The translations under genes were made by a program, and so were the position numbers. From assembly GCF_001194135.2 (NCBI RefSeq), contig NC_068986.1:25281571-25342413 (forward strand): a DNA stretch of 60,843 nucleotides, read 5' to 3'. This DNA comes from Octopus bimaculoides. Its lineage: Eukaryota. Below are positions 9,201 through 28,603 of this stretch, piece after piece (the first letter of the stretch is position 1; the number at the start of each line of letters is the position of its first letter). The notes beneath the pieces were generated by a model, which was not told the origin of the DNA, ran no database searches, and saw nothing but the letters and a program-made list of their open reading frames with translations.

Positions 9201-12200
9201 CTATCAGTTCAGTAACCAGTAGATGTATTGGAAATTTAAGAAATACTAAACAGTGATACAGCAGGCTGTTTTCAAGCATGGAGTATTATTCCTCTCTTAA
9301 TGCTTTCCTTTTTGTAGCTGGGTGAACTTACCACTTGAGGGAAGATATGTGCATGTACAGTCTTGTGCTGGTGTGAGGATACAAATAATTGTTACTTTGG
9401 CGAGTAGATTTGCAGCACAGACTTTGGCTGTATATAATGTTTTGATTTATTAATGCAGAAACCCCTCAAGGAAGTTGTAGGACAAGTTCTGTACAATGAT
9501 TCAAAGTTTTTATTCTTAATATAAGTGCAATGAAAGGACCTTAGTGAAAAAGCTAACAGAATGATAAACATTCACCAAAGAACTAGCCTATTGTCTTTTC
9601 GAAGACATGGGTTTGTTTGTCTAGAAAGTAGAATTTGTTGAGAAGAAATTTTGGTGGTTTACAGTCCAGGGTTCAATTAAAACAATGAACAATTTTGCCT
9701 TTTATTCTAGCAAGTCTCAATAAAAATGCAGTCAGTACCTTACTAAGAATAAATGGATACGAGTACTGACTGATGTAGATGGTTCGTGTCCATTCAAATG
9801 TTGAATAAGTTGTTTCTGTGCTACACAAGCTGCTTTGATGAAAGCTCCCCCCCCCACCACCACCAATGATAACAACTACAAAGAGTACAATTACATAACT
9901 GAAAAGAACATTCAAAGCAGTTGTGTCCCAAATAAACAGATAATATCCCTAGGTGTTAAAAGAGAAACAGATACCAAATTTCTGAGAACTAAAGACACTA
10001 AATTATCTAGTAAAATCTGTTTGGTTCAGTAAAGCATATATGCTAAAGTTTTAAAAACCACAAAGAACTTCATGGAAAATGGGAAATACCAGGAGAGATC
10101 TTGTTGCGCTTATCTTCTTTAAAACCTGTTAGAACTCCGGTTCCATTAGTTAGTTTTGATGCCAAGGCTCCAAGGTTCACAACTTTTTCAGTATCACTGA
10201 CTGAAATTAAAATAGATAAAAAAAGTGATGCTCAATACAAAGTGAATTAATTTTAATTGGGAACAGAATGAAAAATAATAAAAATTTACAACACAATATG
10301 GTATTATTTCATATAAAATTGTGTTGTTCCTGCTAGCAAAAGACTCATATACCTGCAAATACACAAATGTAGTTACGCTGGCACTCTGTCGGTTATGACG
10401 AGGGTTCCAAATGATCCGATCAGCAGAACAGCCAGCTCGTGAAATTAATGTGCAAGTGGCTGAGCGCTCCACAGACATGCATATTCTGAATGTAGTTCTT
10501 AGGGAGATTGTGACAAAGCTGGTCCTTTGAGATACAAGAACTACTCATATTTGCCAGCTGAGTGGACTGGAGCAACATGAAATAAAGTGTCTTGCTCAAG
10601 AACACAACACACCGCCAGGTATTGAACTCATGACCATATGATCATGAGCTGAATACCTTTACCACTAAGCCACAGCCACAATGTAATCATAATTATAAGC
10701 ATTTTAACATCCACTTTTCCATGCTTGCATGGTTAGACTGAATTTGTAGAGGCAGATTTCCTATGGCTGGATGCTCTTCCTGTCATCAACCCATAGCTGT
10801 TTCCTAGCAAGGTAATATGTCCTCATGGAAATAATTTGTCAGATAAGACTGGAAATGAACAATGTACAAGTTTGTATGATGGTGATGCTAAATATCAAGA
10901 CAATGCCCCCCCGCCCACACACACACCGAGCTTCTTTCAGTTTCCATCTACCAAATCCATGTCCTAACAATAAAACTATCCATACCTTTTCCATCATTTT
11001 CTGGGTTCAAGATGGTCAAAGATGTACTACCATCTTTCCGTCGTCTTAAGAAACCATACTGAAAGTATAAGAAAACCAAGAACACATTATTGTACAGTGC
11101 AACGTGTTAACATTAAATGTGAGATGTCTTCTTATTTGTGTTTTAACTTAATGTTAATACTTCATTTAGATTTTCTGAAGTGCGAAAGTGCAGCCACAGT
11201 CCAGCTGTTGTGTGATTCATAAAGATTTGGAGATTAGCATATTTTAGAAATTAGACAGGAAGGGACAACATCTAACATATACAGTAGGGGTTCTCAACTT
11301 TTTTTTACCTGTGGACTCCTTTGATTCCTATTTTACTCCTGTGCACCCCCATACCAATCTGATATTTAAAAAATCCTATTGTATTTTTGTTGTAAAGTGG
11401 TCTTTTGCCACTGTTGCATCTGTCTTTTGATGATGGTTGTCGCTCTGACAGATAATGTTATATTCCAAAGTTGAGGATAAAATGTTTCCATCTGGCACTG
11501 TGCGACCCCCCACCCACTAGTTGTAACAGTGTTCATCATCATTGTCGTCGTTTAACGTCCGCTTTCCATGCTAGCATGGGTTGGACGATTTGACTGAGGA
11601 CTGGTGGACCAGATGGCTACACCAGGCTCCAATCTGATTTGGCAGAGTTTCTACAGCTGGATGTCTTTCCTAACGCCAACCACTCCGTATCCTCAAAAGG
11701 TTGGAGCATCATAACATTCACTCCGTATCACAGTATGATTACTATATCAACACAGACACGATTATCAACACAGTCTACACGTACTCTTGACCATCTGACC
11801 TTTTCTTTCTGTCAACCGGCTGTTGGTCTATTTATAATGGCTGGTTACTACCACTTTTTACCAGGAGGGATGTACAGTTTCACTACACAACAATTTTATA
11901 GTTAAATATTATTCGCACTTGTATAAAAATTGTTAAAATATTTTGTGTATTGTGAGCTGAAATGCCAAAACACTTCTTTACTTGGAAAGAAAAAAGCCAG
12001 ATCACTTCGATCTCATTTTGATATATTTGATAAAAAAAATCTCAAAGATAACTGCTAACTATCTTACACTGTCTGTCATTAGGAGAAGGCAAAGTTCACA
12101 CAGAAATCCCATTCTATGTAACTGATTGTGGTCAGGGTGACTTCTACTTAGTTTGTCATCATAATACATCAGTATTAAATAGCTATAGTAAAAGTCATTT

Positions 12201-14891
12201 ATTTAACTCAGTGGTTTTCAACCATATTTTTAACTTACGGACTTCTTTGATTACTATTTTATTCTGGTGGACTCTCATAGCCACTCAATGTTTAAAAACT
12301 AGTTTAATAGATGCTTCTTTCAAAATTTCTATTTTGTTTTTCACACATTCACTGGTTTAGTTTGAACTATGTAAAACATTAGAAAAAGAAACTGCACTGT
12401 TTTTTTGCAATAAATATATCTAAAGCAAAATTTTTTTCATGGACCCTGCAAAAGCTTATATGGAACCCCCAGGGGTCTTATAGACCCCATTTGAGAACCA
12501 CTGATTTAACTCATTTGTTAGCATATTCATGTTGAAATACACTACAGCCTTTTATTTTAGTTCATTTTGAAAATAACGAAAAATTTCATAAAATAACTTT
12601 ATAGTTCTATATTTAAGAGATGAGGAATTATGTACATTATTTACATTTGACGGATATTTGTTGTTAACACAACGTTTTGGCTGATATACCCTCCAGCTTT
12701 CTTCAGGTGTCTTCAAACCCAGGTTCGAAATTTCCCCTAGACACCTGAAGAAGGCTGGAGGGTATATCAGCTGAAACGTGTTAACAACAAACAAGATGAG
12801 GACAAATATCTATCGAATGTAAATAGCTTTATCATTATTAAACTAATATTTGAAACGTAGATTAACCCTTTGAGGTCAGATATAAATAAGTCTTTCCATG
12901 CAGGATGCAAAAAAAAAAAAAAAGGAAAAATACAAGATGATAATCAACCAAATAGCTTATAATGCAAATGTGGCTTATATACCACACCTGTCTTCAGAAT
13001 TTAGCATTGTCAATAAGCCACACCCATCCTCTGTGGAAGAAAGCATATTGTGTCAATAGGCCACACCCATTCTTAAAGGGTTAACATGAGATTTAGATGG
13101 GAAGTTTTAATTTCAATCATTTTAAAACTGGAGCTTTGTATCAAAGCCCCAAGTGTGGTTTCAGGTGAGATGATGCTATCAAGAGAAAGGTTAAGTAATG
13201 TAAATCAATCTTTTACCTGTGCTTTCGGTTGTCTCAATGTAAGCAGATCAGCGGCTTCTTTTGCTGCAGCACGAGCTTGTGCCAAAATTTCTTCAGGTGT
13301 CATATTATCGGGAATCGCTTCAAATCGACTCAAGCTAACACAGAAATAGGTTAGAAAAAAGGAAAAAGACACAATGTAAAATAGATTTATATGCATCTAT
13401 CTTTTACTTGTTTCAGTCATTAGACTGTAGTCAATTAATGTTGGATTGTTTATGTTCTCGTTAGTTAGCAGTCTGGTGAAAGAGACAAATAAAATAAGTA
13501 CCAGACTTAAAAATGAAAAAGTAAAATAAGCACCGAGGTGGACTTGACCAACTAAACCCTTCAAGGCAATGCTCCAGCATGGCCGTAGTCTAATGATTGA
13601 ATTAAAAGATAAAAAAAACATAAAACATAATCCTACATTCCTTAAATATGTGTGTATTTTAAAAATTACTATAAAGTGTTGTAATGACTTCTTACTGTTA
13701 AAGTGTGAGAGAGATTAATATGACTCAAGGACTATTACAAGAGGTTTTTAACCCTTTAGCATTTAAACTGCCAATATCTGGCCCTAATATTCTACATGTT
13801 CTATGTACAAAGTGGCCAGATCCGGCCTCTCACACCAACTCAATCATGTCATTCTAAAAATTAACAGCTACCTCATCAAAATCTCGAAGCCACTAGCATA
13901 ACTAGAGTGTGTGCGCCTTCTGTTCCCCCCCGCCCGGACTCCACAAAAAACACATATTGCTTACAGCAGACCAAAAAGTGTTGCCCTGGGTGGACTGCCT
14001 CTACCCCCCCCTCCCGACTGCCCCCAGCTATGCTAGTGCATGATTAATTCAAAACAATGTAAATATATGTTACTTTTGACAGAATAGTGTGAATGCCAAA
14101 GGGTTAAACTGCCAATATCCAACCCAAATATTTTACTTGTTGTATGTTAAAATGAACTAGATCCAACCTTTCACACCTACCCTACAATGTCATTCTAAAA
14201 ATATACTAACACACACCACAGAAATCTTGAAACTATAAGATAATGTGTGATTAATTCAAAGCAATGTGAATAAATAAGCCATACATTTGACAGAGAGATC
14301 TGATTGTTAAAGGGTTAAATAGTTCAATTCTTACCTTGTTTTCTGTTTTTTGTGCTTCTTTTCTTTGGAATGCTGGTCATCTGTGACGGAATCAAAATTA
14401 TCATCATTGACACCGATAATGTTATCTTCACTTTCATCTTCCAGACCAAGTTCCTCCATGGTCAATTCATTCATAAAATCGAGGTTACGCTTCATACCAA
14501 GGAGGTTCTCCTGAACAATGGAAAAATCCACAGACGACGATGAAAGAATAAAGTCAATTTTTTAACAACTATAGGAAAAGTATTTTTCTGTTTAGAACAA
14601 CAAGCACATGTATCATCATCATCATCATCATTTAATGTCCACTTGTACAGATTTTGTTATGGCTTCACTATTGCCAATCCTCACTGGTTTCCAAGTGAGG
14701 AAATACATTCTCACAGCTAGTCATGTTTTTCACGGAAGACTGGAAATTAACAACCTCACCTGTATGACAATGATGCTCACTTATGAATATCGTAGTACTT
14801 ATTCTACTGGTCTCTTTTGTCAAAACGCTAAGCTACAGGGACGTAAATGTGCCAGCATTAGTTGTCCAGCGATGTTGGGGGACAAACACAG

Positions 14892-14926
<35 letters not shown>

Positions 14927-17900
14927 CACACACAATGGACTTCTTTCACTTTCCATCTACCAAATCCACCCACAAGGCTTTGGTCAGCCTAAAGCTATAG
15001 TAGAAGACACTTGCCCAAGGTACCACGCAGTGGGACTGAACCCGGAACCATGTGGTTGGTAAGCAAGCTACTTACCACTAGTTTTATTAATTCTTGACAA
15101 ATTGGTTTTACCAAGAAATATCAACCAAAGAGATAGAGCAAAATTTCAATTTAGCTCTTTTCAGTTTCTGAATGGAATGTAATAAAACTTATACCTTGCT
15201 CAATTGTTTTACTCCCATGTGAAGTAAACGTCTCGCTTCTTTATAATAAATAGTCTCAGGTCTGTTGTAGATCATAGCGTTCTGACACATAAGAATAAAA
15301 TCTTTCTGCAAAAATATAAAGAAATAGAAATTCATAAATTTAAAGAAAGTAAATATTAATATCAAATGTATACACAACAATTAAAAGTAGAAATGACAAG
15401 ACTGATAATAGTATTTCTGTTGTTGGCACTCCGTCGCTTACGATGTCGAGGGTTCCAGTTGATCTGATCAACGGCACAGCGTGCTCGTGAAATTAATGTG
15501 CAAGTGGCTGAGCACTCCACAGACACGTGTACCCTTAATGTAGTTCTCGGGGATATTCAGCGTGACACAGTATGACAAGGCTGACCCTTTGAATTAGAGG
15601 TACAACAGAAACAGGAAGTAAGAGTGAGAGAAAGTTGTGGTGAAAGAGTACAAAAGGGTTCGCCACCATCCCCTGCCGGAGCCTCGTGGAGCTTTAGGTG
15701 TTTTCGCTCAATAAACACTCACAACGCCCGGTCTGGGAATCGAAACCGCAATCCTATGACCGTGAGTCTGCTGCCCTAACCACTGGGCCATTGCGCCTCC
15801 ACGATAGTATTTCTATTAGACCATAAAAAATAAATTAAATAAAAAATTTTGTAGTGGCTTAGAAGAGGAAGGACAGTGCTTTTTAGGGTCTTTGTGACTG
15901 GTGGTTGAAGGTGCTGTTACATCATACACTTGGCCTAAAATGCTTGCAAAAGAGTCAACTCTACTAAAAGTTTTCAAAAGTCAGGTGGTAATCTTGAATT
16001 AGGTGTTGGATTATGTTTGTCACCCAAAGTTGTATTATACAGAATTACAATGAAAATATTATTGATCACTGATTAAGCATTGTAGGTAACTCTGAAAACA
16101 TGTGCAGTTATTGTCTTTTTCCAAGCATTTGGCTGGTATGCAGCAAAAGGATGCCTGAGACAGAGGAAGCACAGTATGTTGAAATCATGTGACCTGATAG
16201 TTCTGGCACCCACGCCTGAATGCCCCTGTCTGTTGTGATATAAGTGTGTGTGCACTAAGCACTGTATGTCTATATGAGAGGGCCTCTCAAGGCAAATACT
16301 GCTGGAATTTGGCATTCTCATAATACATTCACATTAAGAAGGATATAAAGATCATTGTTATCATTTCAGCATCCACGGGTCAGATGAAATTTGTTGAAGT
16401 AGATTTACTACAACTAGATGCTTTTCTTGCCACGAACCCTCACTTGTTTCCAAGTAAGATAAGATTTCCTATGACTAGATATGCCTTGAAAGATTGGAAA
16501 CAAAGGACACCGCTTTAATGACAGTGACACTCATTTACTACTATCACATGATGTCAAAGCAAGGAGACAGTAATACACCCACACACATGTGACTGGCTTC
16601 CTTCAGTTTCTGTCTTACAAATCCTCTCACAAGGCTTTGGTCAGCCCAGGGCAGCAAAATGAAGATGCTTGCCCAAGGTGTTAAGCAATGGGACTGAATC
16701 CAAAACCATATGGTTGGGACGCAAACTTCTTATCCCAGTCACGCCTGACCTGAAAGTCATTCACAGAACTATACTTTTCTTAAACAGTTCAAGCTACAAT
16801 ATTTTCGATACATCTAGCAAAAAGATATTCATGGTGACTACAGGGATTTGATTGTACATGAAGAAGAAGAAGAATTAAAAATACTACCTGATTTTACAAT
16901 ATAAATTTAGGGAGCAAAATATTGAGAATAACATAAGAGAAAATCAAAATTTTAATGATCTTTAGAGAGAATTAATTCCAATAAATATTTTTATTTAACC
17001 CTTCTGATATCCATTAAAATTTCACATTCATTTATGTTCTAAACATCAGCTTCTTAACGACAAAGTTAATAAATTTTTTATTATTTTCAAAATTAATCAG
17101 AACAAAATATATTTCAATAGAAATATGACAATGAAAGAATCAAAGCATGAGCAAATTGTGATTATAAAGATTTTTTGAGACTAAAATGCTATCCTGGTGA
17201 TCAAACCTGGTTGTCATAAAACAAAATCTAGCCATTAATTTTTTTTTTAATCCTGTTTAAAGAAACAAAGCTAAATTAATTTCTAAGTTGATGGGAACCA
17301 AAATTTACCATAAAAATTATAATAATTATAATCTATCTAAATTCAAAGTCATAAAGAAACAAAATAGTAAATGGATCCAAACTTACTTTGAATTCTTTTG
17401 TGCTAGCATACTCTTCGTCATCTACTTTAGAAAGAATTGTGCTGAAATCCATGGGCTTTTGAATGATACTTGAATAACCGGGAGCAATGACATCATTAAC
17501 TGGGAAGGCGAAGAAACCATGGGTATCTTTCCTATGAAAGAAATGAAAATGAAACCAATTTGTTTTAAGTTATTGTTTAGCCCCAGGTCAACACTGATCA
17601 GGAAGATCTATGATCACTGGTATAATGGGGGTATTTCTTTTTTCTTCAGACATCGGCTGTGTGGTAAGTAGCTTGCTTACCAACCACATGGTTCTGGGTT
17701 CAGTCCCACTGCGTGGCACCTTGGGCAAGTGTCTTCTACTATAGCNNNNNNNNNNCACCTTGGGCAAGTGTCTTCTACTATAGCCTCGGGCCGACCAAAG
17801 CCTTGTGAGTGGATTTGGTAGATGGAAACTGAAAGAAGACCATCGTATATGTGCATATGTGTGTTTGTCCCTCCAACATCGCTTGACAACCGATGCTGGT

Positions 17901-18922
17901 GTGTTTACGTCCCTGTAACTTAGCGGTTCGGCAAAAGAGACCGATAGAATAAGTACTAGGCTTACAAAAGAATAAGTCCTGGGGTCGATTTGCTCGACTA
18001 AAGGTGGTGCTCCAGCATGGCCACAGTCAAATGACTGAAACAAGTAACAGAGTAAAAGAGAGTATATATCTAAGCTTTCTTTATTCAATCTATCCTCTTT
18101 TTTTTTTATAGCAGTTCAGTGCAGTTTGAGATAGACTTAGCTGCTATTTGTAACTGGCCCAACAACAGCATAGAATGTTCTCCTTCGTCTTGTTTGTCAG
18201 CCAATTAAGAAAATGCATTAATGATCAACCTCTCTCACTTGATTTGGAGATCAGACATGTATATACCTTCATTGTTACTTGCAAGCAAGTATAGCCTGAT
18301 AGTATGTATCATGTTTCTGCTAATTGTTTTAAGTGCCTATGTATCCACGAGTAAACAAAGACACACTTTTGGTCCTTCCACTCTTGATCTAGAGGAGCAT
18401 TGGGGCTTGAGGGAGAGAGAGAGCTGCAATGAAAATGAAAACCAGCACTTGGCTGGTACCGTCCATCAAAATTTTATGCAAATTTATTTTCCAAATACAA
18501 GCTTAATAATTACAAAGTTATTTTACAAAATTAATTTAAATACTGCATTTCAAGAGACATGGTAAGAAAGGAGTTAAAGAAATGGAAGCAAATGTTCAGA
18601 GAATTACCTTTGGAATTGCTTTGTCATATACTTAAGGAACGTCTTCATGTTACTTGGTTCCTCTTCTTGGTTAGACAGTTTCATCCGTTTTTCAATAGGC
18701 TCATCATCTTCAGCTGCTTTATCTGGAGGATGCGGAGTGGATGTAGGAGGTGACAAAAATAACTGTTTTGCTGCAGGGGAGGAGTATGGTGGAGAATGTG
18801 AATGTAATTCAGATTCATATTCATCACGCTCTCTTTTATGTGGACGTCCCTGCAAATATAATTTTTTTTCACAGATAATTAAGAGTCATCAAATATAGTA
18901 ATGTTTACAGAAATGACTCTTC

Positions 18923-18968
<46 letters not shown>

Positions 18969-21900
18969 GTCCGGTTTCTCTTTCAGAAAGAAATGCAAAC
19001 AAATACACATACATATTTATATCCAGAATGATCATGGAAAATCTCTAGAAATCCTATTAATTTTGAAATATAATAAAAATTATTTCAAATTCTGACACAA
19101 AGTCAGCGATTTTGGAGGAGGGCTTAAGTCAATCAACCCCAGTGCTCAACTGGTACTTATTTTATCAACTCTGGTGGAATTTGAACAAAGAACATAAAGA
19201 TGGACGAAATGCTGCTAAGCATTTTTCCAGGCATATTAACAATTCTTCCTCAAAACTATAAATAAAAAATGTAGACATTTCGTCTACTATTCTACTGATT
19301 CTATTAATCAAGCTCTATTGTTATGTAGAAAAACCAACAGAAGGAACACAGTGAAATTGCTGAGGGAGGAGTTGAATGATCTAATGTGTCAGATAGAGCT
19401 CTTCTTCAAGGAATTAAAAGTTACAGAGCCAGTATCTGATGTGTATACTGAGATCATTGAAGAAACAAACAGTGGTTTTTCAGTGGGTTTGTTTCTCTGT
19501 AAAATAGAAACACTGTCCTCTTTCTTTTTCTTTGCTGTCAATTTCACCTTGATGATGATCTCTGAAATGTTAGATAATCCACTCCCTCACAACAATTTCA
19601 TTGCATCCCTTCTTTCACTTTCACTTTCATCAAATAAAACAAATCTTACTGACACAGACCAGTCTCTTCAGATTCCCTTTTATCTACTGTCATTTGGCTA
19701 AGTCCACAACACAAAGTAGTATATGTATGTACTTCATGGAAATATATTTGGCTTTATTAACCCTTACTGTGTAAGAACCAAGTATAATTGCTTTTGATAG
19801 TGAGGTACTGTTCAGACTTCTACACATTTCACGCATATTTTAATTTTACTGGCTAATAGTAGAATGAAGTTGTAAGAACTTTTTTGCATTCAGTAATTGC
19901 ACATTAGTACACAAAAATTTAATCAGTGTAGGGAGAGTTAAATATAATTGTGTGATTAGTTTTTAGGTGGTTAATGAAATTAACACTTTAATTAGCATCT
20001 ACAATGATATAAATTATAATGTAAAATTTTTTTGTCTTTGGCACAGCATTCATTATGTTCTCTTATTTGCATTGAGGGCCCAATGAACTAATAAGTCCTC
20101 TATTTAAAAAAAAAAGAAAGAAAAAACAAGAAAAGACAGAAAAACTACTATGATTAAATATCCTGACAGAATTGTAAATGGAACTGTAGAAAATGAAATA
20201 AACATTTTGATCAGAGATTCTTTCACATTCCTTAACAAAACAAAAAATAAAAAATCTCCTAGTGAGACAGATAAAAAAAGGAGTGCATTTATACATACAT
20301 CTTCATGGTGTCTGTGTTTTTCTTTTTCACTGGATTTTTTCTTTTTCTTCTTTTTATGTTTATGCCTACGTTCTTCAGTGTCCCCAGTATATACTTCAGG
20401 TACTGGTTCAGTAACTTTTAATACCAATTTCAGTGGTTTTTCAGATGGCTTCTCTGTGGAACACAAACAGATTTTGATCATTTTTTTGCAGGAAGAGTTT
20501 AAGCAAATCATTTTTAAAAAACTAGTCAAACTGTGTGCATGTATGTTCGTATGTGTATGTGCATGTGTGTATGTATATATATATATATATATATCATTCG
20601 CCATGATAGATCGCTGACCACTACATTTATATTTTTTTTCTCCTTGTTTCTCTCCTTATTTCTTTCTGTGTTCCTTTCAGTTGAAGAGCGTAGGCTCGAA
20701 ACGTCAAAGACTTTCGCTATTCCTGAGCGTTAAACTAACACATCCTTTTGTTGTTTACACCACCTGTCTTCGTCTGTTGTTTTTTTAGTAAATTCTCCCC
20801 CCCCCACACACACACATATATATATATGTGCATGTATGTGTGTNNNNNNNNNNNNNNNNNNNNNNNNNNNNNNNNNNNNNNNNNNNNNNNNNNNNNNNNN
20901 NNNNNNNNNNNNNNNNNNNNNNNNNNNNNNNNNNNNNNNNNNNNNNNNNNNNNNNNNNNNNNNNNNNNNNNNNNNNNNNNNNNNNNNNNNNNNNNNNNNN
21001 NNNNNNNNNNNNNNNNNNNNNNNNNNNNNNNNNNNNNNNNNNNNNNNNNNNNNNNNNNNNNNNNNNNNNNNNNNNNNNNNNATATATATATATATATATA
21101 CAAATTCAAATCTCTTTCATGGATATATAATTATGAACAGAAGTCATCGTACTGTGATGGCTACATCGTGGTAGGTTGATTCTTGTTTATTTTTATGTAT
21201 CTTGACCATACATGTACTGATGAACAAAAGAATACAGGTTACTTCACAGTTTTTCTGTATTTGATTGAGAAACCAGTGGTCTACCGTTGAGTTAAATGTT
21301 TTTAAGAGATAAATTTTGAAAGCTGCATTCCCTCGCTTTCAGTAAATATGTTGCTTATTTTTTGGTAGTTTTTTACTTATTTAGTCCCTCGAAGCGTGAG
21401 GCATTACTACACAGCTAATGCCCTTTATATATAATTATATATATATATATCTCACACTTAAAAAATGATCACTCTTTCCCCCACCCCATAATCTACTGTA
21501 TATTCTCCCTTTTACAAGATAAACTTGTTCTGCTCAGATGTAACCCTTCGACAACAAGAAACCCGTTCTGATCTGGCTCCTTCTCTTACACTTTAATTCC
21601 TCATCTCCTATCATAAAGCTGCTTCTCTCAATGTTCATAATCTTGCAACCTGCATGGCAACCTCATGAGTGCTGGTACCATGAAAATAAAAAAGCACCCA
21701 GTACATGTAAAGTCATTGGCATTAGGAAAGGCATCCAGCTGTAGAAACCATGCCAAAGGAGACATTTGAGCCTGGCACAATTCTTGGACCCATCCGTTTC
21801 TATCAAACCATTCAACCCATGCCAGGATGGAACATGAATATCAACCTTTTACTATTTAATCTGGCTGTCTCCTCTCAAAGATCTTTGTTTGCAAGTTACT

Positions 21901-23685
21901 TGGTGACCCTGCCAGTGCATTCAGTCCACACTGTTAAGTGGTTGGCATTGGAAAAGCATCCAATTGTAAAAACCACGCTAAAACTGACCTCACCTGTGCT
22001 GGTGCTATATTAAAAGCACTCATTCCACTCTGTAGGGTGGTTGGTGTTAGGAAGGGCATCCAACCATAAAAACCATGCCAAAACAGACATAGAAGTCTGG
22101 TGCAGTCTTCTGCCTGGCCAGCTCCTGTCAAACCATCCAACCCATGCCAGCATAGAAGGAGGACATTAAAGGATGATGATAACAATAATGAAATCAAGCT
22201 AAAATATTCTACCTGTTTTATGTTCAAACTGGCCTGATCTGACCTCTCACACCTACCCTATGAAGTCATTCAAAAAATATATAATCACATCATAGACATC
22301 TCAAAGCTACAAGAGAATGCATGATTCATTCCAAATAATGTGAACAAATAAGTATTACATTTGACAGAATAATCTGAATGCTAAAGGGTTGGATGACTAA
22401 GAATATAAAAAATGAATTCGATACAACTGTTGATAACCACGACATGGTTGAATTGACAAGGTACTATGAGCTAACAGCCAAATCTCCCTCAAATAATTCT
22501 CCACTGTCTTATAAAAAAAAAGGACACATTGAATATAATGTAGCATGGAAAAAAAAAAACAAAAAAAAAACAAATGGAACTGTCATGACTGGAGCGCATT
22601 TGAGCATATTTTTGCTCATCAGAGCAGACTCGAGGATAAGCAACAATCGTACTATTTCATCCCTTATTGAAAATAAACACTCAACTTATTTTAATAATTC
22701 TAAAAGAAAAACAATATCCCAATGGATTTGATTTAAGCAGACTAACTCAAATCTTTATCTGAGCAGCTGACAAATTTACTCATTCGTATATATTATCAGA
22801 GCATTGATTTTTTAACGGTGAGAAAATCATAATTTGATATCAATAAAGCAGTTATTGACTATCCATCGTGTGTGTGCGTATGTGTGTATATAAATATATT
22901 ACAGATAGAATAACAGAAGTAAGATATTTTAAAGATACACATATCAATGTTTTAAACACGATTTGAAACAACAACATACAGGCTCAGTGTTTAACATTAA
23001 CTATTTGGCAACAAATTCTCTTTGATTTGATATGAACCGTCAAAGTCTAAAGCTGTCGTATGCTTATTCTGTTCTGATAATGTTATTGAATTGTAATGTA
23101 TAAGATTAAATGATCACTAATTAATAATCAATCGTTCAATAAATGAAAGGTAGACGTCAAAGAATTTAGAACTATATTTTGAATTCTAGAAAAATAATAA
23201 AACAAAATGTAAGATAAATATTTTCGTTCATAGCAAACTATCGATAATCTGATCGGCTCAAACGTTTCAAGATTTAATATTATTTTCATTTATAATTTTT
23301 TTTTCTTACAAAATATAGGTCGGAAACTGTAGTGTTAAAACAAAGCAACATATTTTTTAGAAATGTTTCTTTTTTTCTCTAAACAAACTCATTTTTTTTT
23401 ATAAACGTAATATTAATAATTTGTTTTAAATTTAAATTAAAGATAAACTTGACTAATAAAAAAACCCAACAATAATAAATTCGATTATTAAAAAAAAAGA
23501 CGAGACAAATGTATCCATTGTTTTGCGAAATAGTTAAAGATCTGTCCAAGCTTTAAAGAATCGGAACATTTTGATAAGATCTGGTAGACTTTGGAATTAA
23601 AGTATACAAAGTTTTAGATACACTCACCCTCAAGCTCGAGTATTTTCTTATCAGATTTATGATGCTTCTTGTGTTTTTTGCCCAT
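2935..23685 (-). CDS. BRD7: Bromodomain-containing protein 7/9 (single invertebrate BRD7/BRD9 ortholog), 16 coding exons, ~693 aa
   Basis: Hand-spliced: MGKKHKKHHKSD...EKPSEKPLKLVLKV; bromodomain RKDTHGFFAFPVNDVIAPGYSSIIQKPMDFS...KDFILMCQNAMIYNRPETIYYKEARRLLH; GFKEDKRNK; YLNYGPFSSYAPSFDSSFAN; C-terminal LRNAMGIS. These match human BRD7/BRD9 as I recall them. All junctions are GT-AG with compatible phases and exon lengths sum to 2082 nt. BRD7 versus BRD9 cannot be resolved. Confidence 0.96.
4265..4305 (-). CDS. BRD7: BRD7/9 exon 15
   Basis: ANKVTQELRELAKQ; ttgcag| and |GTAAAC; 41 nt. Confidence 0.92.
5632..5790 (-). CDS. BRD7: BRD7/9 exon 14
   Basis: KEISKEKELQQKLDYTAGLIQDLHSTQHDRLSAKPPVHLAFVPGPSQKEAQL; 159 nt. 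Confidence 0.94.
6207..6594 (-). mobile_element. tRNA-derived SINE family A with internal (TA/TG)n
   Basis: Head ggctgtgtggtaagtag...ggttcagtcccac (A/B-box-like); body shared with many copies. Confidence 0.9.
6967..7048 (-). CDS. BRD7: BRD7/9 exon 13
   Basis: DPYDVDFESLKTLSSDLGMDLSFLDHF; G|GTAAGT; 82 nt. Confidence 0.92.
7511..7600 (-). CDS. BRD7: BRD7/9 exon 12
   Basis: RKKEESKKQAQAAAELDQAMAAASADTSSQ; ttgtag| and |GTAATT; 90 nt. Confidence 0.88.
7808..8255 (-). mobile_element. GAT-tailed repeat (RTE 3' UTR family). Other copies near 1-230, 4390-4690, 4805-4990, 11530-11690, 21900-22180, 27790-28050, 34270-34580, 36780-36930, 37810-38160, 47360-47715, 47962-48131, 51243-51580
   Basis: Near-identical gtttaacgtccgctttccatgctagcatgggttggacg...gatgcccttcctaacgccaacc blocks, each abutting (CAT/GAT)n. 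Confidence 0.9.
8457..8568 (-). CDS. BRD7: BRD7/9 exon 11
   Basis: IMAFADSTGDYTIKMVDNLLDVLTNGEHSRVQGQIDQ; 112 nt. Confidence 0.94.
8867..9002 (-). CDS. BRD7: BRD7/9 exon 10
   Basis: VSYLNYGPFSSYAPSFDSSFANITKEESDMLMTTYGDETGVQYAK; 136 nt. Confidence 0.96.
10090..10200 (-). CDS. BRD7: BRD7/9 exon 9
   Basis: SDTEKVVNLGALASKLTNGTGVLTGFKEDKRNKISP; 111 nt. Confidence 0.94.
10986..11058 (-). CDS. BRD7: BRD7/9 exon 8
   Basis: YGFLRRRKDGSTSLTILNPENDGK; tttcag| and G|GTATG; 73 nt. Confidence 0.92.
12201..12511. mobile_element. hAT-type MITE with a perfect 8-bp target-site duplication
   Basis: TIRs CAGTGGTTTTCAA / TTGAGAACCACTG (element 12209-12503), flanked by ATTTAACT on both sides. Confidence 0.9.
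12632..12825. mobile_element. Foldback pair of Penelope-like element termini with hammerhead-like cores
   Basis: ACAC-CTGAAGA-A-GGCTG..CAGC(C/T)-GAAAC motif on both strands. Confidence 0.65.
12862..13084. mobile_element. piggyBac-type MITE
   Basis: TTAA-CCCTTTGAG ... CTTAAAGGG-TTAA. Confidence 0.8.
13217..13334 (-). CDS. BRD7: BRD7/9 exon 7
   Basis: LSRFEAIPDNMTPEEILAQARAAAKEAADLLTLRQPKAQ; 118 nt. Confidence 0.92.
13748..14318. mobile_element. piggyBac-type MITE, tandem 1.5 copies, with a nested MITE. Same family at ~6704-6931, 22190-22390, 59600-60017; a related one at 56963-57189
   Basis: TTAACCCTTTAGCATT ... AATGCCAAAGGGTTAA; second unit ends AAAGGGTTAA at 14318. Confidence 0.8.
14335..14510 (-). 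CDS. BRD7: BRD7/9 exon 6
   Basis: ENLLGMKRNLDF...KKQKT; gttcag| and AG|GTAAGA; 176 nt. Confidence 0.92.
14792..15079 (-). mobile_element. SINE family A copy (BRD7/9 intron 5)
   Basis: Same body and head as 6207-6594. Confidence 0.88.
15195..15305 (-). CDS. BRD7: BRD7/9 exon 5, bromodomain C-half
   Basis: KDFILMCQNAMIYNRPETIYYKEARRLLHMGVKQLSK; acetyl-lysine-binding Asn present; 111 nt. Confidence 0.97.
17387..17531 (-). CDS. BRD7: BRD7/9 exon 4, bromodomain N-half
   Basis: KDTHGFFAFPVNDVIAPGYSSIIQKPMDFST; tcatag| and |GTAAGT; 145 nt. Confidence 0.97.
17655..18062 (+). mobile_element. SINE family A copy (BRD7/9 intron 3)
   Basis: Full head-to-tail copy with a 10-N gap. Confidence 0.9.
18608..18849 (-). 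CDS. BRD7: BRD7/9 exon 3 (GRPHKRER...KQFQR)
   Basis: ttgcag| acceptor, AG|GTAATT donor, 242 nt. Confidence 0.92.
19328..19500 (+). other. Inverted, diverged, partly rearranged copy of BRD7/9 exon 2 within intron 2
   Basis: 19414-19464 matches the exon 2 coding strand at 42/51 nt (LKVTEPVSDVYTEIIEE vs LKVTEPVPEVYTGDTEE); 19328-19359 resembles EKPSEKPLKL. Confidence 0.85.
20299..20453 (-). CDS. BRD7: BRD7/9 exon 2 (EKPSEKPLKLVLKV...KKKKKKK...HHED)
   Basis: ccacag| acceptor, |GTATGT donor, 155 nt. Confidence 0.95.
23628..23685 (-). CDS. BRD7: BRD7/9 exon 1 (MGKKHKKHHKSDKKILELE)
   Basis: ATG at 23685, donor G|GTGAGT, 58 nt, phase 1. Confidence 0.93.
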
Positions 23686-26921: not shown

Positions 26922-27279
26922 CGAGGGTTCCAGTTGATCCGATCAACGGAACAGCCTGCTCGTGAAATTAACGTGCAAGTGACTGAGCACTCCACAGACA
27001 CGTGTACCCTTAACGTAGTTCTCGGGGATATTCAGCGTGACACAGTGTGACAAGGCTGACCCTTTGAATTCCAGGCACAACAGAAACAGGAAGAAAGAGT
27101 GAGAGAAAGTTGTGGTGGAAGAGTACAGCAGGGTTCGCCACCATCCCCTGCCAGAGCGTCGTGGAGCTTTTAGGTGTTTTCGCTCAATAAACACTCACAA
27201 CGCCCGGTTTGGGAATCGAAACCGCGACCCTATGACCGCGAGTCCGCTGCCCTAACCACTGGGCCATTGCGCCTCCACT
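26922..27279 (-). mobile_element. tRNA-derived SINE family D. Other minus copies at ~15410-15802, 10370-10670, 46995-47295, 4020-4240
   Basis: Head gtggaggcgcaatggcccagtggttagggcagcggac...ggtttcgattccc. Confidence 0.9.
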
Positions 27280-28230
27280 GTCACAGTAAGATTAAACCCA
27301 AAACTATGTGTTTCTCATTTATTGAATAAAGAAGTCATTCACAATTATTTGTAGTCTAAATTATTACATAAAACATAGAAATACCCAGGGGCAGTAACTC
27401 TGAATAAAAACTGACTTGGATTATGACTTCTCCAATCCATGTCGGCATGAAAAAGCGATTTGTAAGGTGATGATGATGACGACTTCCTGTACATATTCGT
27501 TAAAATATTTTCATTTACTCTAAAACGTATGGCAAGTAAAAAAGAAAAAAAAAAGGCCTGGAAACTTAGGTGCAGCCGTGGCTCTATGGTAAGAAATTTG
27601 CTTCCCAACTGCATGGTTCCAGGTTCAGTCGAACTGTGTGGCATCTTGGCCAAGTGTCTTCTACTATGGCCTTGGACCGACCAAGGCCTTGCAAGTGAAT
27701 TTGGTTGATGGAAACAGAAAGAAGCCCGTCGTGGAGAAGACAAGTGACCTGGACTTTTGGCGAATTGCTGTGCTTGAGAAAACATGTCAAGCTAAGTGCA
27801 ATCGGGGTCGTGGCCAGTGCCGGTGACGCGTGAATGACATCCGTGCTGGTGGCATATGAATGGCACTCGTGCCAGTGACACGTTAAATGCACCCAGTACA
27901 CTCTGTGGAGTGGCTGGCGTTAGGAAGGGCATCCAGCCATAGAAACCAAGCCAAAACACTGGAACCAATGCAACTCTCCAGCTTATCATCTACAGTCAAA
28001 CCGTCTAGCCCATGCCTTCATGGAAAACGGACGTGAAATGTTGATGATATATGCGTGTATGCGTCCTTGTATCTGTGTTTTCCCTCACCACTACTTGACA
28101 ACCGGTACTGGGGTGTTTACACTTGACTGCTGTTTGTAGCAGGTTGAGTAACCTATAGAGACTCTTATTGGCTTGTGTTTATGTGGTTTTGTTTAAGACT
28201 TCTTGTTTTATTGCTTGTTATGCTAATAGC

Positions 28231-28603
28231 AGTGGAGGCGCAATGGCCGAGTGGTTAAGGCAGCGGACTCGCGGTTTCGATTCCCAGACCAGGCGTTGTG
28301 AGTGTTTATTGAGCGAAAACACCTAAAGCTCCACGAGGCTCCGGCAGGGGACGGTGGCGAACCCTGCTGTACTCTTTCACCACAACTTTCTCTCACTCTT
28401 ACTTCCTGTTTCTGTTGTACCTGTATTTCAAAGGGCCAGCCTTGTCACACTGTGTCACGCTGAATATTCCCGAGAACTACATTAAGGGTACACGTGTCTG
28501 TGGAGTGCTCAGCCACTTGCACGTTAATTTCACAAGCAGGCTGTTCCGTTGATCGGATCAACTGGAACCCTCGACGGCGTAAGCGACGGAGTGCTAACAA
28601 TAA
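28231..28603 (+). mobile_element. SINE family D copy. A related head with a different body lies at ~59720-59965
   Basis: Reverse complement of 26922-27279 and 15410-15802. Confidence 0.9.

What the first reader, a model, noticed from the sequence alone, without database searches (positions are those of the whole stretch)
19328..20453. Intronic inverted copy of exon 2: candidate editing-complementary sequence aimed at the conserved KPLKLVLKV motif
Seen: about 850 nt downstream of exon 2 in the pre-mRNA are two blocks complementary to it, in nested hairpin order. 19414-19464 pairs with codons L31-E47 (42/51 Watson-Crick, plus G-U and A-C pairs). 19328-19359 pairs with the exon's first ~30 nt starting at the 3' splice site. 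A ~50-nt unrelated loop separates the blocks. Differences are biased to third codon positions (ACT/ACA, GAA/GAG, GTA/GTG, GAA/GAT), unexpected for random decay of an intronic copy. The copy has GGA where the exon has AAA (Lys25), putting C opposite both A20439 and A20438. Established: coleoid cephalopods recode extensively by ADAR A-to-I editing, exon-intron duplexes direct site-selective editing, and A-C mismatches favour it. Inference: an exon-derived, non-TE guide that could recode K25 to E/R/G, edit neighbouring Lys/Thr codons, or mask the acceptor in a chromatin-remodelling subunit. The cephalopod assignment is itself inferred.
Basis: partly seen in the sequence, partly recalled or inferred. 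Interest (0 to 1): 0.85.

Follow-up and report, generated by a model that had tools for sequence, protein, structure and literature searches.

The report
Exon-derived hairpin in octopus BRD7 intron
Intron 2 of the Octopus bimaculoides BRD7 gene holds a real, single-copy, rearranged partial copy of exon 2 that could pair with the exon as RNA. It more probably folds on itself, and nothing available here shows that it guides RNA editing.

Summary
The main observation holds. Window 19410-19464 is a 55-nt inverted copy of exon-2 positions 20371-20425 (45 Watson-Crick pairs plus 2 G-U; blastn E 2e-10; duplex -53 kcal/mol against -15±3 for shuffles). The window is Octopus bimaculoides, and the gene is the BRD7 homologue on the minus strand.

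The copy is not isolated. It sits in a roughly 300-nt patchwork that also contains:
- a direct copy of the 3' splice site plus the first 23 nt of exon 2;
- a marginal inverted copy of the exon start;
- a separate 55-nt inverted repeat.

This element folds on itself (-90 kcal/mol, z = -4.6). That fold excludes the exon duplex and dominates predicted ensembles (0.74-0.90, against 0.24-0.08 for the exon duplex).

The copy is present in O. sinensis and O. vulgaris. It is absent from Argonauta and from a decapodiform contig, although both conserve the exon. It lies in the slowest-evolving intronic stretch of the gene (3.2% against 7.7% divergence). The only compensatory change supports the local hairpin, not the exon duplex.

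The reported third-codon-position bias is not significant. The Lys25 A:C argument rests on an ambiguous pairing register. No RNA data could be reached.

Verdict: a real exon-derived inverted duplicate and a plausible but unproven ADAR substrate.

The parts
20299..20453 (-). Exon 2 of the BRD7-like gene. It encodes (E)KPSEKPLKLVLKVTEPVPEVYTGDTEERRHKHKKKKKKKSSEKEKHRHHED.
   Evidence: Translation. The peptide is identical to residues 21-71 of O. sinensis, O. bimaculoides and O. vulgaris BRD7. The exon-1 ATG is at 23685.
18852..20298 (-). Intron 2, about 1447 nt.
   Evidence: Exon 3 maps to 18851-18590 by alignment to Argonauta and by tblastn. The acceptor sequence is shown.
20371..20425 (-). Exon segment B: the last two bases of the V30 codon plus codons L31-E47. 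This is the exon arm of the long-range duplex.
19410..19464 (-). B': inverted copy of exon segment B. It forms 45 Watson-Crick pairs and 2 G-U out of 55, with exon-A:intron-C mismatches at 20407/19428 and 20392/19443.
   Evidence: Present in O. sinensis and O. vulgaris.
19470..19512 (-). D: direct (same-sense) copy of the exon-2 polypyrimidine tract, AG acceptor and first 23 exon nt. It carries an AAAC tandem duplication.
   Evidence: (families D13, D18). The acceptor is AG in O. bimaculoides and O. sinensis but GG in O. vulgaris.
19326..19359 (-). A': weak inverted copy of the acceptor AG plus exon nt 1-31. It overlaps the right arm of the local inverted repeat.
   Evidence: Shuffle p about 0.05. 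Cofold gives -25 kcal/mol and about 29 bp.
19561..19613 (-). Left arm of the local intronic inverted repeat.
   Evidence: (I15).
19339..19393 (-). Right arm of the local intronic inverted repeat.
   Evidence: (I15).
19320..19625 (-). Self-folding intronic hairpin element, 306 nt. The main stem has 49 pairs over 56 alignment columns.
   Evidence: MFE -90.3 kcal/mol, z = -4.55, 0 of 100 shuffles. 98% of pair cells are kept in three species, with one compensatory pair.
19314..19800 (.). Slowest-evolving intronic stretch of the gene between O. bimaculoides and O. sinensis/vulgaris.
   Evidence: 14-15 substitutions in about 450-460 aligned nt (3.2%), against 7.7% over 9.8 kb of introns. It is the lowest of 184 windows. 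Permutation found 0 of 5000 within intron 2.

Best explanation
The feature is a single-copy, rearranged partial duplicate of the 5' part of BRD7 exon 2. It was found in all three Octopus species examined (O. bimaculoides, O. sinensis, O. vulgaris) and was not found in the two more distant cephalopods. It lies 0.8-1.1 kb into intron 2.

Anatomy, in pre-mRNA order:
- a direct copy of the 3' splice site plus exon nt 1-23;
- immediately after it, an inverted copy of exon nt 29-83;
- then a weak inverted copy of the exon start;
- all of this set between the arms of a further 55-nt inverted repeat.

Origin (inferred): one local replication or repair event with strand switching, or a few small successive duplications. 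This happened after the Octopus and Argonauta lineages split, and well before O. bimaculoides separated from O. sinensis and O. vulgaris.

Behaviour as RNA: the element most likely folds on itself into a roughly 300-nt imperfect hairpin. The alternative pairing of its 55-nt block with exon 2 (-53 kcal/mol) is topologically exclusive with that hairpin and is predicted to be the minority state.

Consequence (inferred): in ADAR-rich neural tissue the local hairpin would be the main editing substrate. Any editing of exon 2 through the long-range duplex would be incidental and low-level. It would be favoured at the two A:C sites, 20407 and 20392, which are both synonymous.

I find no evidence that the element is a selected guide aimed at Lys25.
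For: - Real homology, and single-copy in the sequence searched.
- Patchwork of direct and inverted exon fragments, with no extended flanking homology.
- Present in three Octopus species. Absent from the Argonauta hians locus (23 kb) and from a decapodiform contig (20 kb), both of which retain the exon.
- Changes on the copy lineage are random with respect to codon position and change the encoded residues.
- No coding or splicing role is preserved. The plus-strand ORF is broken by indels in O. sinensis and O. vulgaris, and the cryptic acceptor AG is GG in O. vulgaris.
- The local hairpin has z = -4.55, and the only compensatory pair found belongs to it.
- Ensemble probability of the exon duplex is 0.24, falling to 0.08 as context grows. 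The local hairpin is 0.74, rising to 0.90.
- Since the species split, the exon duplex gained one G-U and one A:C mismatch. O. vulgaris also lost 6 bp of the duplex through a 16-nt deletion.
Against: - The element lies in the least diverged intronic stretch of the gene (3.2% against 7.7%), so some constraint is possible and a purely neutral relic is not established.
- The exon duplex is still strong in all three species (-54.7, -52.7 and -45.4 kcal/mol). It is the best partner for that exon segment in 18 kb of pre-mRNA.
- Equilibrium folding of RNAs of 1-2 kb is unreliable and ignores co-transcriptional order, helicases and proteins.
- Coleoid ADAR activity is very high, so even a minority conformer could be edited appreciably.
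- No RNA data were available to settle the question.
Confidence: 0.5

Rival explanations
1. Functional editing-complementary sequence. Blocks 19410-19464 and possibly 19326-19359 pair with exon 2 in the pre-mRNA before intron 2 is removed. ADAR binds the 55-bp imperfect duplex and recodes Lys, Thr or Glu codons of the conserved N-terminal motif. Purifying selection on this pairing keeps the intronic zone conserved.
For: - Strong, specific duplex, retained in three Octopus species.
- Meets the published dsRNA criterion (PMC9989829).
- Lies in the slowest-evolving intronic zone. B' itself has 1 substitution in 55 nt.
- Exon-intron ECS duplexes and conserved intronic islands are the established mechanism in mammals and insects (PMC5705066).
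Against: - No compensatory change. The two post-split changes weaken or merely tolerate the pairing, and O. vulgaris deleted 6 bp of it.
- The conserved zone extends about 190 nt beyond any exon-complementary sequence. B' alone is not distinguishable from its surroundings (Fisher p = 0.08).
- Absent from Argonauta and a decapodiform despite an identical or near-identical exon peptide.
- The A:C mismatches in the strong block are at synonymous sites and arose from exon G-to-A changes.
- The local hairpin competes and is predicted to win.
- Published coleoid analyses tie editing level to local mRNA structure over about 100 nt (PMC7703385).
Confidence: 0.17
2. The conserved unit is the local intronic hairpin (19320-19625), and its similarity to the exon is only history. 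It would act as a long dsRNA in the pre-mRNA. One possibility is an ADAR-recruiting 'editing inducer element' that raises editing of nearby exon sequence without pairing to it, as described for Gabra3. Another is a structural element that affects intron-2 processing.
For: - z = -4.55.
- 102 pairs with 98% of cells paired in three species; one G-C to A-U compensatory pair and four one-sided compatible changes.
- Predicted occupancy 0.74-0.90.
- The low-divergence zone covers the whole hairpin.
- There is precedent for a distant intronic duplex that induces exon editing (PMC3479170).
Against: - There is effectively only one species comparison, because O. sinensis and O. vulgaris are near-identical.
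- The shuffle control has no power (173 of 500).
- Three pairs are broken in O. sinensis/vulgaris, and one inner helix lost an arm to the O. vulgaris deletion.
- The structure was derived from one of the sequences it was counted on.
- The conserved zone also extends 5' of the hairpin.
- No Rfam family matches. No RNA data.
Confidence: 0.2
3. Splice-site masking. Pairing of 19326-19338 and neighbouring bases with the exon-2 acceptor (20455-20444) would modulate exon-2 inclusion. Alternatively, the direct copy D would serve as a decoy or cryptic acceptor.
For: - The acceptor pairs with 19327-19338 at probability 0.97-0.99 in 1.2-kb contexts.
- D keeps a polypyrimidine tract and AG in two species.
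Against: - The probability falls to 0.33 when the whole intron is folded.
- The acceptor is transcribed and probably used before the element, about 1.1 kb downstream, exists (inference).
- The AG of D is GG in O. vulgaris.
- The only annotated isoform difference at this junction is an alternative acceptor 21 nt upstream of exon 3, which is unrelated.
- Skipping exon 2 (155 nt) would shift the reading frame.
Confidence: 0.05

Closest known systems
Exon-intron editing-complementary sequences (GRIA2 Q/R and R/G sites; insect Syt1 and para)
   Same: A sequence in the downstream intron is complementary to part of the preceding exon. It is able to form an imperfect duplex of tens of base pairs in the pre-mRNA, and it lies in a relatively conserved intronic island.
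   Different: Those ECSs are validated by editing data and mutagenesis and are conserved, with covariation, over very long times (Syt1: PMC5705066). Here there are no editing data and no covariation. Presence was shown only in the three Octopus species examined, and a competing local fold is predicted.
Gabra3 intronic editing inducer element (Daniel et al. 2012, PMC3479170)
   Same: A long intronic stem lies downstream of the exon, within the same intron, and is itself a good dsRNA.
   Different: The Gabra3 element is 150 nt from a short exonic hairpin and was shown to be required for editing. Here the stem is about 690-1130 nt downstream, is built partly of exon-derived pieces, and is untested.
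Inverted-repeat transposon pairs (Alu or SINE inverted repeats) as promiscuous ADAR substrates
   Same: Two inverted copies within about 1 kb in one transcript. They meet the BLAST criterion of at least 50 nt and at least 80% identity that is used to call intramolecular dsRNA (PMC9989829).
   Different: This is not a repeat family. One arm is a conserved coding exon and the other is a unique copy of it.
Complex local duplication-inversion rearrangements by template switching (FoSTeS/MMBIR-type; named from general knowledge)
   Same: Short direct and inverted segments copied from a template less than 1 kb away and joined head to tail, without long flanking homology.
   Different: The mechanism is inferred from anatomy only. 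The junctions are too diverged, at about 15-18%, to show microhomology reliably.

Membership tests
ADAR editing-complementary sequence (exon-intron ECS) | Imperfect duplex of at least 20-30 bp between the exon and an intronic sequence of the same pre-mRNA | tested here: met
   47 of 55 positions paired, -52.9 kcal/mol, shuffles -14.7±3.4.
ADAR editing-complementary sequence (exon-intron ECS) | A-to-I (read as A-to-G) changes observed in the paired exon RNA | not testable with these tools
   No octopus BRD7 transcripts were found in the protein collection. No BRD7, BRD9 or bromodomain entry was found in the supplements that could be searched. Two papers recalled from memory as carrying octopus editing-site lists were not found under the ids tried.
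ADAR editing-complementary sequence (exon-intron ECS) | The duplex is a favoured conformation of the pre-mRNA | tested here: inconclusive
   Ensemble probability is 0.24 in 1.2-kb contexts and 0.08 for the whole intron. The MFE structure lacks the duplex. Equilibrium prediction at this length is unreliable.
ADAR editing-complementary sequence (exon-intron ECS) | Conservation with compensatory change in species that share the exon | tested here: inconclusive
   Kept in three Octopus species without any compensatory change: one C-G became U-G and one A-U became A:C. O. vulgaris has a 6-bp loss. Absent from Argonauta and a decapodiform.
ADAR editing-complementary sequence (exon-intron ECS) | Editing lost when the intronic block is deleted or mutated | not testable with these tools
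   Requires a minigene experiment.
Exon-derived duplication relic (pseudo-exon fragment) | Specific homology to the parent exon, not a dispersed repeat | tested here: met
   E 2.4e-10. The only other copy in the 60-kb window and in the Octopus orthologous loci is the exon itself.
Exon-derived duplication relic (pseudo-exon fragment) | No preserved coding or splicing capacity | tested here: met
   Inverted orientation and a 4-nt AAAC duplication. The ORF is broken by indels in O. sinensis and O. vulgaris. The acceptor AG is GG in O. vulgaris.
Exon-derived duplication relic (pseudo-exon fragment) | Substitutions on the copy are random with respect to codon position | tested here: met
   Copy lineage: 2, 4 and 2 changes at codon positions 1, 2 and 3.
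Exon-derived duplication relic (pseudo-exon fragment) | Evolves at the neutral (intronic) rate | tested here: inconclusive
   The zone is at 3.2% against a 7.7% intronic mean. It is the lowest of 184 windows, but the 5% quantile is 4.1% and there is effectively one species comparison.
Intronic long-hairpin dsRNA / editing inducer element | Long local stem that is more stable than expected from composition | tested here: met
   MFE -90.3 kcal/mol, z = -4.55, 0 of 100 shuffles.
Intronic long-hairpin dsRNA / editing inducer element | Stem maintained by compensatory evolution | tested here: inconclusive
   One compensatory pair, four compatible changes and three disruptive changes. The controls have no power with three sequences.
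Intronic long-hairpin dsRNA / editing inducer element | The stem is itself edited and is required for editing of the nearby exon | not testable with these tools
   Requires RNA data and mutagenesis.

The most novel reading that the evidence does not exclude
An editing-complementary sequence born recently by local inverted duplication of the very exon it targets. On this reading, an Octopus-lineage rearrangement created a guide for exon 2 of BRD7, which I take from general knowledge to be a PBAF chromatin-remodelling subunit. The guide is now under purifying selection and toggles between a self-folded 'off' hairpin and an exon-paired 'on' duplex, which would recode the conserved KPLKLVLKV-TEPVPEVYT region in neural tissue.
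Probability: 0.1. Interest if true: 0.6.

Novelty: new member of a known kind. Interest (0 to 1): 0.3.

Why it matters
The coleoid editing analyses I could read were done on transcripts and tie editing to local mRNA structure (PMC7703385). I found no analysis of exon-intron guides in cephalopods, though I did not search for one systematically.

If exon 2 were edited through this block, it would be a datable example of how an ECS arises, namely by duplication and inversion of the target exon. It would sit in a chromatin regulator rather than an ion channel, and it would come with a built-in competing fold.

If exon 2 is not edited through this block, the locus is a useful negative control. It would show that a strong 55-bp exon-intron complement in an ADAR-rich animal, lying in a slow-evolving intronic patch, need not be a guide.

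The practical lesson for the scan is that a third-position bias between an exon and its non-coding copy is expected from the exon's own synonymous changes. It is not evidence of selection on the copy.

Tried and rejected
- **Chance match:** rejected (E 2e-10; 0 of 1000 shuffles).
- **Transposon origin:** no other copy of the block or of the 540-nt zone in the 60-kb window, in the three Octopus loci, or in the Argonauta and decapodiform loci. The 72-nt SINE-like repeat that flanks the bromodomain exon has 10-14 copies in the window. Genome-wide copy number could not be tested.
- **Larger tandem duplication of exon plus flanks:** no flanking homology.
- **Real coding exon on the plus strand** (127-aa ORF, 19318-19701, which reads ELKVTEPVSDVYTEIIEE): rejected. 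It is broken by a 2-nt insertion in O. sinensis and a 16-nt deletion in O. vulgaris.
- **Alternative or poison exon using the copied acceptor:** the AG is not conserved in O. vulgaris. The extra 7 aa of O. sinensis isoform X1 come from an acceptor 21 nt upstream of exon 3.
- **Known RNA family:** no Rfam hit in the zone. The mir-297 and mir-466 hits, far below their gathering scores, lie in the TG/TA-rich low-complexity stretch at 20535-20600.
- **Finding edited transcripts:** three protein searches found no octopus BRD7 transcript contigs, and one query timed out. Exact look-ups of the window ORFs found nothing.
- **Editing tables in the literature:** no BRD7, BRD9 or bromodomain entry in the searchable supplements. 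Two papers recalled from memory as carrying octopus editing-site lists were not found under the ids tried.
- **Metagenome scan for the block:** 0 hits.
Full report
**What is there.** The region belongs to a gene on the minus strand.
- Exon 2 (20453-20299) encodes (E)KPSEKPLKLVLKVTEPVPEVYTGDTEERRHKHKKKKKKKSSEKEKHRHHED.
- Later exons carry a bromodomain and the BRD7/9 C-terminal domain.
- The exon-2 and bromodomain peptides are identical to the proteins NCBI names 'bromodomain-containing protein 7' in Octopus sinensis, O. bimaculoides and O. vulgaris. The exon-2 peptide is identical in Argonauta hians.
- The window is 100% identical over 2201 nt to O. bimaculoides chromosome CM046606.1, so the cephalopod assignment is now established.
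- Exon 1 starts at 23685. Exon 3 is 18851-18590. Intron 2 is therefore 20298-18852.

**The observation.** The main block is real.
- 19410-19464 is complementary to 20371-20425: 55 nt, 82%, with the arms 906 nt apart.
- The blastn E-value in the window is 2.4e-10. No shuffle out of 1000 reaches its score.
- As RNA it gives 45 Watson-Crick pairs, 2 G-U and 8 mismatches. The energy is -52.9 kcal/mol, against -14.7±3.4 for shuffles.
- It is the best partner for that exon segment anywhere in 18 kb of the pre-mRNA; the next best is -35 kcal/mol.
- The second block (19328-19359) is much weaker as a copy: 46 of 1000 shuffles score as well. It can still form about 29 bp with the acceptor and exon start, at -25 kcal/mol.

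- Immediately 5' of the inverted block, in pre-mRNA sense, there is a direct copy of the exon-2 polypyrimidine tract, AG acceptor and first 23 exon nucleotides. It lies at 19512-19470, carries an AAAC tandem duplication, and no shuffle out of 1000 matches it.
- The '50-nt unrelated loop' is one arm (19339-19393) of another inverted repeat, whose partner is 19561-19613 (55 nt, 75%).
- There is no extended homology of the flanks, so this is not a simple tandem duplication.
- The element is therefore a roughly 300-nt patchwork of direct and inverted exon-2 pieces. I infer a local duplication with strand switching. This is an inference from anatomy, not a demonstrated mechanism.

**It is not a dispersed repeat.**
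- Neither the block nor the surrounding 540 nt has any other copy in the 60-kb window or in the orthologous loci, apart from exon 2 itself.
- Five inverted-repeat pairs of at least 50 nt and at least 80% identity, within 2.5 kb, exist in the window.
- The pair flanking the bromodomain exon consists of copies of a 72-nt repeat present 10-14 times in the window.
- The exon-2 pair is the only one of the five that overlaps a coding exon of this gene.

**Folding.**
- The element alone (19625-19320) folds into a long hairpin: MFE -90.3 kcal/mol, z = -4.55, 0 of 100 shuffles. Its main stem pairs 19561-19625 with 19326-19393.
- The inverted exon copy sits inside the loop closed by that stem. Exon:B' pairing and the local stem therefore cross each other and are in practice mutually exclusive.
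- In partition-function folds, the exon:B' pairs have probability 0.24 in 1.2-kb contexts and 0.08 when the whole intron is included. The local stem has 0.74 and 0.90.
- The acceptor-to-19327-19338 pairing drops from 0.97-0.99 to 0.33.
- Predicted folding is thus dominated by local structure. Equilibrium predictions for RNAs of this length are only indicative.

**Comparative evidence.** I obtained the orthologous loci of O. sinensis (L004), O. vulgaris (L006), Argonauta hians (L003) and a decapodiform-like contig from an ENA metagenome assembly (L001).
- Argonauta and the decapodiform conserve the exon (89% and 80% nucleotide identity). They have no inverted copy of it anywhere in 23 kb and 20 kb, and their introns do not align with the octopus intron.
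- O. sinensis and O. vulgaris align across the whole intron at about 89% and both carry the element.
- Duplex energies are -54.7 kcal/mol in O. bimaculoides, -52.7 in O. sinensis and -45.4 in O. vulgaris.
- Since these species split, the two arms differ at two adjacent pairs. C-G in O. bimaculoides is U-G in the others, and A-U is A:C. Neither change is compensatory.
- O. vulgaris also has a 16-nt deletion that removes six base pairs of the duplex.

**Rate of evolution.**
- Between O. bimaculoides and O. sinensis, intron 2 has 117 substitutions in 1376 aligned sites.
- The stretch 19800-19326 has 15 substitutions in 459 sites, against 102 in 917 for the rest (Fisher p = 2e-7). In a scan-statistic permutation, 0 of 5000 trials matched the best 450-nt window.
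- Across all 9.8 kb of aligned introns of the gene the mean is 7.7%. This stretch, at 3.2%, is the lowest of 184 intronic 450-nt windows. The 5% quantile is 4.1%, and a second stretch at 12350-11850 reaches 4.0%.
- Some constraint is therefore possible, but three points limit what it says about the exon duplex:
  - The slow zone is about 470 nt and extends about 190 nt beyond any exon-related sequence.
  - The inverted block alone is not distinguishable from its surroundings (p = 0.08).
  - There is effectively one species comparison.
- Counting pairs of the local hairpin across the three species gives 98% of cells paired. There is one compensatory pair (G-C in O. bimaculoides, A-U in the other two), four one-sided compatible changes and three disrupted pairs. 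The controls have no power with three sequences.

**The arguments for selection on the copy.**
- The ten exon-copy differences fall at codon positions 1, 2 and 3 as 2, 4 and 4 (p = 0.44 for an excess at position 3).
- With the Argonauta exon as outgroup, eight changes lie on the copy lineage (2, 4, 2) and change the encoded peptide.
- The other two lie on the exon lineage. Both are synonymous G-to-A changes. They are exactly the two sites where an exon A now faces an intron C (20407 in Glu35 and 20392 in Val40).
- A third-position excess is in any case expected, because the exon can only accept synonymous changes.
- The Lys25 claim depends on the marginal block and on an ungapped register. In the optimal pairing A20439 is bulged opposite C19343/C19344 and A20438 pairs with U19345.

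**Other readings tested.**
- The plus-strand 127-aa ORF through the copy is broken in the sister species.
- The copied acceptor is GG in O. vulgaris.
- The annotated O. sinensis isoform that differs at the exon 2/3 junction uses an acceptor 21 nt upstream of exon 3.
- No Rfam family matches the zone.

**Editing evidence.** None could be reached.
- The protein collection holds no octopus BRD7 transcript contigs.
- The searchable supplements of two coleoid editing papers contain no BRD7, BRD9 or bromodomain entry.
- Two papers that I recalled as carrying octopus editing-site lists were not found under the ids I tried.
- Literature context: exon-intron ECSs and conserved intronic islands are established in mammals and insects (PMC5705066). 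A distant intronic duplex can induce exon editing (PMC3479170).
- Coleoid analyses so far relate editing to local mRNA structure over about 100 nt (PMC7703385).
- The pair meets the BLAST criterion used for potential intramolecular dsRNA (PMC9989829).

**Verdict.** The sequence feature is real, exon-derived, and shared by the three Octopus species examined. Its reading as a guide aimed at the KPLKLVLKV motif is not supported by the specific arguments offered, and it remains untested at the RNA level.

My estimates for the competing explanations are:

| Explanation | Confidence |
|---|---|
| Rearranged duplication whose RNA mainly folds on itself; exon pairing is an incidental minority state | about 0.5 |
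| The local hairpin is the constrained unit | about 0.2 |
| A true ECS | about 0.17 |
| Splice-site masking | about 0.05 |

Noticed in passing
window 16661-16732 and 17665-17736: Two copies of a 72-nt SINE-like repeat lie in inverted orientation (82% complementary) on either side of the bromodomain exon 17551-17384. The repeat occurs 10-14 times in the 60-kb window and also in the O. sinensis locus. Flanking inverted repeats of this kind can favour back-splicing or exon skipping.
   Followed up: partly
window 11850-12350: Second slowest-evolving intronic stretch of the gene: about 4.0% against a 7.7% mean, and 94% identical to O. sinensis. It is single-copy in the window and not alignable to Argonauta. 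Its nature is unknown.
   Followed up: partly
window 18852-18875; L004 8090-8115: O. sinensis BRD7 isoform X1 carries 7 extra residues (GQKLHLQ) from an alternative acceptor 21 nt upstream of exon 3. In O. bimaculoides the corresponding AG is TG, so this isoform should not exist there.
   Followed up: yes
window 26922-27280 and 28230-28573: A 359-nt inverted repeat, 91% complementary, with arms 950 nt apart, upstream of the BRD7 gene. It is probably a pair of transposon copies or one element with long terminal inverted repeats.
   Followed up: no
window about 20850-21100: A run of N (assembly gap) about 400 nt upstream of exon 2, inside intron 1. It shows up as X runs in ORF translations.
   Followed up: no
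window 18930-18966: A run of about 35 A on the plus strand, which is a long U tract in the pre-mRNA shortly upstream of the exon-3 acceptor. It is variable in length between species, with gap columns in the alignment.
   Followed up: no
window 20535-20600: Rfam hits to mir-297 and mir-466, far below their gathering scores. They lie in the TG/TA-rich low-complexity stretch just upstream of exon 2, so I do not read them as miRNA genes.
   Followed up: yes
L003 1-1471, L004 1-1468, L006 1-1468: A COX11 (CtaG_Cox11) gene lies head-to-head upstream of BRD7 in Argonauta, O. sinensis and O. vulgaris, so the neighbourhood is syntenic across octopods. The corresponding part of the window, above about 24000, was not examined.
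   Followed up: no
window 20380 and 19455-19456: The only exon-2 difference between O. bimaculoides (C) and O. sinensis, O. vulgaris and Argonauta (T) lies in the duplex. In O. bimaculoides it turns a G-U into a G-C pair with the intronic copy. It is a single event and cannot be told from chance.
   Followed up: partly
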